A DNA stretch of 63,194 bases, the filler included, from Octopus bimaculoides (lineage: Eukaryota): NCBI RefSeq assembly GCF_001194135.2. It is 5 parts of 5 records of this genome, joined end to end, with 100 filler letters (N's around TTAATTAATTAA, not from the genome) between each part and the next. Parts side by side here need not be neighbours in the genome. Positions count along the whole stretch, not along the records: positions 1 to 31,179 come from NC_069003.1; 4 more parts are not named here. One strand, 5' to 3'. This document shows, piece after piece, positions 3,518 to 3,803 of this stretch. Below the pieces are notes generated by a model that did no database searches, had not been told where the DNA came from, and was given only the letters and a program-made list of their open reading frames with translations. The position numbers and the translations under genes were made by a program. The first letter of the stretch is position 1. Every line of letters starts with the position of its first letter.

Positions 3518-3803
3518 TCAGCCATCGTGATCCCATGGTGGACACTGATTGGACGAGAGATTCATTGAGGTCATGCGGGCGTAGAGGGCATCTCCGCCAC
3601 TCCCGCTGACATCTTCAGCCATTATCCCCGCCTTCAGCGGGAACTTCAGCGTCACGTCCAGATGCTCATTGTGTTCGGACAGCGACGTCTTCTGGTAGTG
3701 TAACACCAGCTCCAGTAGCGACGGATGAATAATGTATGGCTCGGCAAAGCCATAGTTGCCGTTTTTCCGCAGGATTTTACAATGGCCTATCACTTTTTCA
3801 TGT
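3518..3803 (-). CDS. PIK3R1-like: p85 terminal coding exon: cSH2 second half plus C-terminal tail ending at TGA
   Basis: Acceptor gaaacag|ACATGAAAAAGTG (phase 2). Encodes [94 protein letters not shown]. The acceptor has a weak pyrimidine tract. Confidence 0.93.

What the first reader, a model, noticed from the sequence alone, without database searches (positions are those of the whole stretch)
3518..3640. The p85 C-terminal tail carries its own YxxM motif (DALYARM)
Seen: after the cSH2 ends (TLKFP) the ORF continues about 40 aa, and includes D-A-L-Y-A-R-M (YARM at 3572-3583). Established: pYxxM is the canonical ligand of p85 SH2 domains, and human p85alpha ends a few residues after the cSH2 without such a tail. 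Inference: a phosphorylated tail could bind its own or a neighbouring p85 SH2. That would give built-in autoinhibition, receptor-independent activation or oligomerisation.
Basis: partly seen in the sequence, partly recalled or inferred. Interest (0 to 1): 0.72.

Follow-up and report, generated by a model that had tools for sequence, protein, structure and literature searches.

The report
Conserved YxxM tail on octopus p85
The octopus PI3-kinase regulatory subunit (p85) ends in a floppy tail carrying Tyr-x-x-Met, the motif its own SH2 domains recognise once phosphorylated; limpet, sea snail, brachiopod and annelid p85 have it too, so it is probably a real but untested regulatory site.

Summary
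The minus-strand last exon (3803..3518) of Octopus bimaculoides LOC106879157 encodes the second half of the cSH2. A 39-residue tail follows: [43 protein letters not shown] lies at 3583..3572.

On its own the motif is weak evidence, since 7% of shuffles of the tail contain a YxxM. Comparison makes it real. A tail YxxM sits 8-21 residues after the cSH2 in Lottia (VYTRM), Batillaria (VYLRM), Lingula (SYTYMQ*) and Owenia (VYARMN*). It also occurs in a mite and in about 15 unnamed lineages. In each named lophotrochozoan protein it is the only YxxM in 400-960 residues.

In an unbiased set, 11 of 116 non-vertebrate tails carry it, against 3.0±1.6 in shuffles. Only Met is enriched at +3, which fits a p85-type SH2 ligand rather than a generic YxxΦ signal. 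AlphaFold2 predicts the tails disordered.

The motif is not universal. A land snail, a leech, insects, spiders and a crinoid lack it.

The functional reading (self or neighbour SH2 engagement) is plausible but untested. It has precedent in mammalian pY688 and the FYIEM of p55 isoforms. No other cephalopod could be retrieved. This is a new variant of a known kind, of moderate interest.

The parts
3572..3583 (-). YARM: the single Tyr-x-x-Met motif of the protein (TAC GCC CGC ATG)
   Evidence: It is the only YxxM in the 860-aa RefSeq model. Its Y and M align with those of the Lingula, Batillaria and Owenia tails and of 12 further tails.
3521..3637 (-). 39-residue C-terminal tail after ...TLKFP (LKAGIM...PPWDHDG), predicted disordered
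   Evidence: AlphaFold2 on cSH2 plus tail gives pLDDT above 80 for most of the SH2 and below 50 for residues 118-136, which include Y129-M132. GC is 57% and GC3 0.61, like the coding sequence upstream.
3518..3520 (-). Stop codon TGA; GC falls to 24% downstream; ATTAAA about 150 nt further on
3638..3803 (-). Second half of the cSH2 domain (first part of the last exon; acceptor AG at 3805-3804)
   Evidence: The PDB search matches human p85alpha 667-720 (whole-protein E 3.3e-22; this stretch i-E 3.2e-12). tblastn results. Sequence read.
6011..6175 (-). First half of the cSH2 ([26 protein letters not shown]...), with donor GTGAGT
9680..10513 (-). Two exons (10513-10379 and 9802-9680) of the first half of the iSH2 coiled coil; the second half is missing from the assembly or model
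   Evidence: Pfam PI3K_P85_iSH2 matches only profile positions 17-90 of 161.
12717..15858 (-). nSH2 domain exons (15858-15787, 13886-13827, 13749-13717, 12914-12717)
16283..28466 (-). N-terminal exons: C1, SAM, C1 and BH/RhoGAP-like region of the same gene
   Evidence: maps the exons. Pfam finds SAM and C1 in P0002, and RhoGAP in the Lingula and Owenia orthologues.

Best explanation
Shown: the last exon of the octopus class IA PI3K regulatory subunit encodes a disordered C-terminal tail. That tail carries a short linear motif, roughly [D/N/G]-x-[V/L/A]-Y-x-x-M, inherited from at least the lophotrochozoan ancestor and kept under selection in many, but not all, lineages.

Inferred: the tyrosine is phosphorylated by a receptor or Src-type tyrosine kinase. 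The resulting pYxxM is then a ligand for a p85 SH2 domain. In several orthologues the Tyr lies only 8-13 residues after the cSH2. SH2 termini sit on the face opposite the pTyr pocket (established knowledge). Binding back to its own cSH2 is therefore unlikely to be the conserved mode.

The more likely targets are the nSH2 of the same heterodimer or an SH2 of a second p85. Occupying the nSH2 would release its brake on p110, as receptor pYxxM peptides do and as reported for mammalian pY688. It would also compete with receptor or IRS docking. The net effect would be a phosphorylation-controlled self-ligand switch that sustains activity or provides feedback.
For: Motif and coordinates.

Family: two SH2 domains flank a PI3K_P85_iSH2 domain. 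The best PDB match is p85alpha. The pTyr-binding arginines are present in both SH2s (SREEV and FLVR in the nSH2, QRDEAE and FLIR in the cSH2).

Conservation: Y and M are invariant in the alignment of Octopus, Lingula, Batillaria and Owenia and in 13 diverse tails. Lottia has VYTRM. Taxa were named.

Statistics: 11 of 116 non-vertebrate tails carry the motif, against 3.0±1.6 in shuffles. YxxM density is 7.1 per 1000 aa in tails and 0.49 in the bodies of the same proteins. Met at +3 is enriched 5.2-fold, while L, I, V and F are not. The tail YxxM is the only one in each named lophotrochozoan protein.

Disorder: pLDDT is below 50 for the tails of Lottia and Octopus.

Coding status.

Precedent: phosphorylation of Tyr688 of p85 relieves inhibition of p110 (PMC10839044, citing Cuevas 2001). 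Insect P60 is phosphorylated under insulin and dephosphorylated by a tyrosine phosphatase (PMC8075199).
Against: There is no evidence of phosphorylation or binding.

The motif is absent from the land snail Bradybaena, the leech Helobdella, and named insects, spiders and a crinoid. One gastropod-like tail reads VFLRLQQQQ, with both key residues replaced in a conserved context. The motif is therefore dispensable in some lineages.

AlphaFold2 does not dock the unphosphorylated tail.

Octopus is atypical: 17 residues follow the Met, against 0-8 in the others (one run-on ORF aside). The octopus motif alone has p about 0.07.

The sequences compared are related, so the shuffle tests overstate independence. 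No second cephalopod was available.
Confidence: 0.5

Rival explanations
1. The tail is a phospho-dependent docking site for other proteins rather than for p85 itself. Candidates are another SH2 or PTB protein, such as a Src-family kinase, an SHP2/Csw-type phosphatase or a Vav/Crk-type adaptor. In this reading p85 acts as a scaffold or substrate.
For: A tail tyrosine is more widespread than the Met: insect-like ENTYI, spider QYLNL and crinoid DENMYT*. Hydrophobic residues at -1 and acidic or Asn residues at -2/-3 resemble Src-type substrates (established knowledge of kinase preferences). A tyrosine phosphatase acts on insect P60 (PMC8075199).
Against: Met at +3 is the hallmark of p85 SH2 ligands and the only hydrophobic residue enriched there. 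There are no data on partners.
Confidence: 0.2
2. The motif works without phosphorylation, for example as a YxxΦ-type adaptor (AP-2 µ2) signal or another C-terminal recognition element linking PI3K to endocytic machinery.
For: Several motifs have Arg at +2 (YARM, YLRM, YTRM, YQRM), as do classical YxRΦ sorting signals (established knowledge). The motif sits in an accessible disordered tail.
Against: Across tails only Met is enriched at +3 (5.2-fold). Leu, Ile, Val and Phe are at or below background, although YxxΦ signals prefer Leu. The protein is cytosolic, not a membrane cargo.
Confidence: 0.1
3. In octopus the YARM is a neutral or decaying remnant, or a chance match, in a fast-evolving tail with no present function.
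For: 7% of shuffles of the octopus tail give a YxxM. The octopus tail is unusually long on both sides of the motif. The motif has been lost in several lophotrochozoans.
Against: Y and M align with the motif in four other lophotrochozoan phyla or classes, with a similar local context ([A/V/L]-Y-[A/L/T]-R-M). It is the only YxxM in the protein.
Confidence: 0.15
4. The tail is an annotation or reading artefact: the true mRNA ends or splices differently, so the motif is not in the protein.
For: The RefSeq model of this gene is demonstrably faulty elsewhere, with a PIF1-like fragment in place of half the iSH2. No transcript was available here.
Against: The tail is contiguous with the SH2 codons in one exon, with no intervening stop. 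GC and GC3 stay at coding levels up to the stop and then collapse. Orthologous tails in other phyla end the same way.
Confidence: 0.05

Closest known systems
Mammalian p85alpha Tyr688 phosphorylation (Cuevas et al. 2001, as cited in PMC10839044 and PMC8075199)
   Same: A tyrosine in the C-terminal part of the regulatory subunit whose phosphorylation relieves inhibition of p110. Binding to the subunit's own nSH2 was proposed (that detail is from my memory of the paper, which is not held in the library).
   Different: Y688 lies inside the folded cSH2 (NLY688SSL) and is not a YxxM. The octopus residue at that position is His (EPYIIHPSL). The octopus site is a canonical YxxM in a disordered tail.
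N-terminal FYIEM of vertebrate p55alpha and p55gamma (p55PIK), and the C-terminal YPV-Y[AST]QM of non-mammalian p55gamma
   Same: Class IA regulatory subunits that carry their own YxxM outside the SH2 domains.
   Different: FYIEM is at the opposite end of the protein. The vertebrate C-terminal YAQM abuts the last SH2 strand with no linker and is HAQM in mammals (YAQQ in p85alpha). Whether either is homologous to the invertebrate tail motif is unresolved.
Drosophila p60 (Pi3K21B) and insect P60
   Same: An invertebrate class IA adaptor with a unique C-terminal extension after the cSH2. It is phosphorylated under insulin and dephosphorylated by a tyrosine phosphatase (PMC8075199).
   Different: Insect-like tails in this data set keep a Tyr (ENTYI...) but not Met at +3. 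The named bee, bug and beetle tails lack YxxM. No phosphosites were mapped in that paper.
Phosphotyrosine tails that bind an SH2 of the same protein or a twin: Src pY527, Crk-II pY221, SHP-2 pY542/pY580, STAT reciprocal dimers (established knowledge)
   Same: An SH2 domain and its cognate tyrosine motif sit on one polypeptide, giving a phosphorylation-controlled closed state or dimer. As in STATs, the Tyr follows the SH2 by only about 8-20 residues, which favours binding in trans or to a different domain.
   Different: No binding or phosphorylation has been shown for the p85 tail. p85 has two SH2 domains that also act as brakes on a partner enzyme, so the outcome could be activation rather than autoinhibition.

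Membership tests
Class IA PI3K regulatory subunit (p85/p55/p60 family) | Two SH2 domains flanking the coiled-coil inter-SH2 (p110-binding) domain | tested here: met
   Pfam finds SH2 twice plus PI3K_P85_iSH2 (E 1.2e-18) in the RefSeq product of this gene. Exons are mapped in the window. The best PDB relatives are p85alpha chains. The second half of the iSH2 is missing from the assembly or model.
Class IA PI3K regulatory subunit (p85/p55/p60 family) | Phosphotyrosine-binding arginines (alphaA2 and the FLVR betaB5) in both SH2 domains | tested here: met
   The nSH2 has [11 protein letters not shown]...GTFLVRD and the cSH2 has [11 protein letters not shown]...GTFLIRP. These align with the invariant columns.
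Class IA PI3K regulatory subunit (p85/p55/p60 family) | Binds and regulates a p110 catalytic subunit | not testable with these tools
   Needs co-immunoprecipitation and a lipid-kinase assay.
pYxxM SH2-ligand short linear motif (p85 SH2 class) | Sequence Y-x-x-M | tested here: met
   YARM at 3583..3572.
pYxxM SH2-ligand short linear motif (p85 SH2 class) | Lies in an accessible, disordered region | tested here: met
   AlphaFold2 pLDDT is below 50 over octopus residues 118-136 of the cSH2-plus-tail construct and over Lottia 390-404. This is a prediction only.
pYxxM SH2-ligand short linear motif (p85 SH2 class) | Motif residues conserved while flanks diverge | tested here: met
   Y and M are invariant. 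The motif is present in Lottia, Batillaria, Lingula and Owenia. 11 of 116 tails carry it, against 3.0±1.6 expected. It has been lost in some lineages. Conservation within cephalopods was not tested.
pYxxM SH2-ligand short linear motif (p85 SH2 class) | Tyrosine phosphorylated in vivo and bound by an SH2 domain | not testable with these tools
   Needs phosphoproteomics and peptide-binding assays.
YxxΦ adaptor (AP-2 µ2) sorting signal | Any bulky hydrophobic residue (L, I, M, V, F) accepted at +3 across orthologues | tested here: not met
   At +3 after tail tyrosines, Met is enriched 5.2-fold. L is 0.90, I 0.89, V 0.86 and F 0.39 of background.
Autoregulatory pTyr-tail/SH2 proteins (Src, Crk, SHP-2, STAT type) | Phosphorylated tail binds an SH2 of the same protein or of a twin | not testable with these tools
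   Only the co-occurrence of SH2 domains and a cognate motif on one chain is shown. The unphosphorylated tail is not docked in the AlphaFold2 models.

The most novel reading that the evidence does not exclude
Class IA PI3K regulatory subunits ancestrally carried a C-terminal self-ligand, a pYxxM tail. Once phosphorylated, it occupies the subunit's own nSH2 or cSH2, or that of a neighbouring subunit. This would give receptor-independent persistence of activity, feedback or oligomerisation. The switch survives in cephalopods, gastropods, brachiopods and annelids. It is degenerate in arthropods and echinoderms, where the Tyr is kept and the Met lost. In vertebrates only a vestige remains (YAQM in fish and reptile p55gamma, YAQQ in p85alpha).
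Probability: 0.25. Interest if true: 0.7.

Novelty: new variant of a known kind. Interest (0 to 1): 0.5.

Why it matters
Class IA PI3K regulation is understood almost wholly from mammalian p85, whose SH2 domains are released by pYxxM motifs on receptors and adaptors. A conserved YxxM on the regulatory subunit itself would add a built-in layer of control: self-activation, feedback or clustering. It is present in several invertebrate phyla and largely lost in mammals. It would also indicate how the pathway was wired in early bilaterians. The idea can be tested directly with one phosphopeptide, two recombinant SH2 domains and a Y-to-F mutant. I found no paper describing this tail motif in the searchable library.

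Tried and rejected
1. The first homology search with the 94-aa exon found one relative only. A profile search from the nSH2 onward was swamped by vertebrates. The exhaustive representative search and a tail-profile search gave the useful sets.

2. Other cephalopods could not be retrieved. Exact look-ups of the exon ORF and of the partial octopus protein P0003, which carries the same tail, found nothing. A metagenome scan with the exon found no relative. Conservation within cephalopods is therefore untested.

3. Naming the metagenome-derived tails failed. The ENA and Logan records carry only assembly ids.

4. The original papers could not be read: Weinkove 1997 on Drosophila p60, Cuevas 2001 on Y688 and Pons 1995 on p55PIK are not held. 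Details of those papers rest on citations in other papers or on my memory, and are marked so.

5. The bacterial promoter and terminator scan is irrelevant for a eukaryote.

6. Human p85alpha was written from memory and used only as a tblastn probe. All domain claims were re-checked with Pfam and PDB searches.

7. The generic YxxΦ reading was rejected on the +3 residue spectrum. Binding in cis to the protein's own cSH2 was rejected as the conserved mode because the linker is short (8-10 residues in Owenia, Lingula and Lottia). That second rejection is an inference from SH2 geometry, not a test.

8. The count of 25 of 167 tails is biased, because the profile included the motif. The unbiased figure is 11 of 116.

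Full report
**What is there**

The window is cephalopod DNA. Its minus strand carries Octopus bimaculoides LOC106879157 (XP_052832107.1). The C-terminal 94 residues of that protein are identical to the translation of 3802..3521.

tblastn and Pfam show a p85-type class IA PI3K regulatory subunit. Its exons are:
- nSH2: 15858-12717
- first half of the iSH2: 10513-9680
- cSH2: 6175-6011 plus 3803-3638
- N-terminal C1-SAM-C1-BH region: 28466-16283

The best solved relatives are p85alpha chains. The last exon aligns to human residues 667-720, up to ...TLAYPVYA; the alignment ends 4 residues before the end of the 724-residue chain.

**The observation**

After ...DVTLKFP the frame continues for 39 residues: [39 protein letters not shown]. 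It then stops at TGA (3520..3518).

The tail is part of the terminal coding exon.
- The previous exon ends in a consensus donor (GTGAGT) and joins in phase to the acceptor at 3805-3804.
- GC (57%) and GC3 (0.61) in the tail match the SH2 codons. GC drops to 24% right after the stop.
- The RefSeq model ends the same way.

No transcript could be examined.

**Is it more than chance?**

For octopus alone, barely: 7% of shuffles of the tail contain a YxxM. The comparison with relatives is what counts.

An exhaustive HMMER search with the last exon returned 150 representatives of p85-like cSH2 ends. Their tails show a recurrent Y-x-x-M 8-21 residues after the cSH2, usually 1-8 residues before the stop.

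Named cases:

| Species | Group | Tail motif |
|---|---|---|
| Lottia gigantea | gastropod | ...PQDPVYTRMNNSPV* |
| Batillaria attramentaria | gastropod | ...PHNDVYLRMQQQ* |
| Lingula anatina | brachiopod | ...QPGSSYTYMQ* |
| Owenia fusiformis | annelid | ...SQEVVYARMN* |
| Tyrophagus | mite | ...ANCYEDMV* |

About 15 further unnamed lineages from metagenome or Logan contigs also carry it, for example YLQM, YAVM, YQTM, YTQM, YTMM, YQVM, YQRM and YVVM.

In alignments the Y and the M are invariant while the linker varies in length and sequence. In every named lophotrochozoan protein the tail motif is the only YxxM in 400-960 residues.

Statistics:
- In the unbiased set (one search hits, non-vertebrate, octopus excluded), 11 of 116 distinct tails carry YxxM. 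Within-tail shuffles give 3.0±1.6, and 1 of 5000 shuffles reaches 11.
- The density is 7.1 per 1000 residues in tails and 0.49 in the bodies of the same proteins.
- After tail tyrosines, Met at +3 is enriched 5.2-fold. Leu, Ile, Val and Phe are not enriched.

These sequences are related, so the shuffle figures are not probabilities. The motif does recur in very different local contexts.

**Limits of conservation**

The motif is absent from:
- the land snail Bradybaena (…HLVHVQGPSGARQS*) and the leech Helobdella (FAN*);
- a bee, a bug, a beetle, spiders, ticks and a predatory mite;
- a crinoid (DENMYT*).

One gastropod-like tail reads VFLRLQQQQ, with Y changed to F and M to L in a conserved context.

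Many of these tails still keep a tyrosine preceded by Asn or Glu: insect-like ENTYI, spider QYLNL, crinoid ENMYT. The tyrosine therefore looks older than the Met.

Vertebrate p85alpha ends YAQQRR. Non-mammalian p55gamma ends Y[AST]QM-PS..RR, a YxxM that abuts the SH2. Mammalian p55gamma has HAQM. Whether these are vestiges of the invertebrate motif or correspond to the conserved 'A-P-Q-P' linker is unresolved.

**Structure**

AlphaFold2 models give confident SH2 and coiled-coil domains and tails with pLDDT below 50. This holds for Lottia residues 390-404 and for octopus residues 118-136, which include Y129-M132. The motif therefore sits in a predicted disordered, accessible segment, as expected for a short linear motif. 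The unphosphorylated tail is not docked.

**How it most likely works**

Shown: a conserved, disordered, tail-specific YxxM sits on a protein whose two SH2 domains retain the pTyr-binding arginines.

Established knowledge: p85 SH2 domains select pY-x-x-M, and occupancy of the nSH2 (and, for some p110 isoforms, the cSH2) relieves inhibition of p110. Phosphorylation of Tyr688 of p85 relieves that inhibition (PMC10839044). Insect P60 is phosphorylated under insulin and dephosphorylated by a tyrosine phosphatase (PMC8075199).

Inferred: a receptor or Src-type kinase phosphorylates the tail Tyr. The hydrophobic residue at -1 and Asp or Asn at -2/-3 fit such kinases. The pYxxM then engages a p85 SH2.

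In Owenia, Lingula and Lottia only 8-10 residues separate the SH2 from the Tyr, and SH2 termini lie opposite the binding face. The conserved target is therefore more likely the nSH2 of the same heterodimer or an SH2 of another p85 than the adjacent cSH2. The outcome could be sustained activation, competition with receptor docking (feedback) or clustering. None of this was tested.

**Rivals**

- A docking site for other SH2 proteins. The older, Met-less tyrosine in arthropods fits this.
- A phosphorylation-independent YxxΦ-type signal. The Met-only enrichment argues against it.
- A neutral remnant in octopus. The octopus tail is atypically long on both sides of the motif.
- An annotation artefact. 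This is unlikely on composition and exon structure.

**Comparison with the known, and novelty**

The gene is an ordinary member of the p85 family. A family member carrying its own YxxM has precedent: the FYIEM in the N-termini of vertebrate p55alpha and p55gamma. The self-engagement idea also has precedent in pY688 and, more broadly, in Src, Crk, SHP-2 and STAT.

What appears not to have been described is a C-terminal tail YxxM conserved across molluscs, brachiopods and annelids. Six literature searches found nothing on it. I rate it a new variant of a known kind, of moderate interest (0.5).

Its interpretation is partly supported: conservation holds, and function is untested.

Noticed in passing
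window 6609-7535 (minus strand); gaps at 8331-8927, 13751-13824, 17114-17932: The RefSeq model XP_052832107.1 fills the place of the second half of the iSH2 coiled coil with a PIF1-like helicase fragment (probably transposon-derived) and low-complexity intron text. Pfam sees only positions 17-90 of 161 of the iSH2 profile. Assembly gaps probably hide the real exons, so the annotated protein is not trustworthy in its middle.
   Followed up: partly
window 16283-28466 (minus strand): The octopus p85 has a C1-SAM-C1-BH N-terminal region instead of the vertebrate SH3-BH. Lingula, Batillaria and Owenia share it, and Owenia also has an SH3. The extra C1 and SAM domains were already noted for shrimp p85 in PMC12817958.
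   Followed up: partly
related proteins P0169, P0179, P0185, P0204, P0207, P0276 (not in the window): Fish, shark, Polypterus, turtle and crocodilian PIK3R3/p55gamma end ...YPV-Y[AST]QM-PS..RR, a YxxM directly abutting the cSH2. Mammals have HAQM and p85alpha has YAQQRR. This may be a vestige of the invertebrate tail motif or may be convergent.
   Followed up: partly
related proteins P0013, P0117, P0120, P0016, P0069, P0045: Arthropod and echinoderm p85 tails keep a tyrosine without Met at +3: ENTYI[GEH] in insect-like sequences, QYLNL and QYLSL in spiders, DENMYT* in a crinoid. The tail tyrosine may be older than the YxxM form.
   Followed up: no
related protein P0314 (unnamed, gastropod-like): The tail ...PPRGVFLRLQQQQ* matches the Batillaria-type ...DVYLRMQQQ*, but with Y replaced by F and M by L. 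This is a clean natural loss of both key residues in a conserved context.
   Followed up: no
L001 (Logan SRR11004884 contig, 5570 bp): A compact p85-like gene with nSH2, iSH2, cSH2 and tail in about 4.5 kb, from an unidentified animal. Its tail ends ...PYQPLYLQMQQNV*.
   Followed up: partly
window 300-2600 and 3040-3480: There are long TA/TATG-type microsatellite and purine- or pyrimidine-rich low-complexity tracts around and downstream of the gene's 3' end. All long 'ORFs' listed there are repeat artefacts.
   Followed up: no
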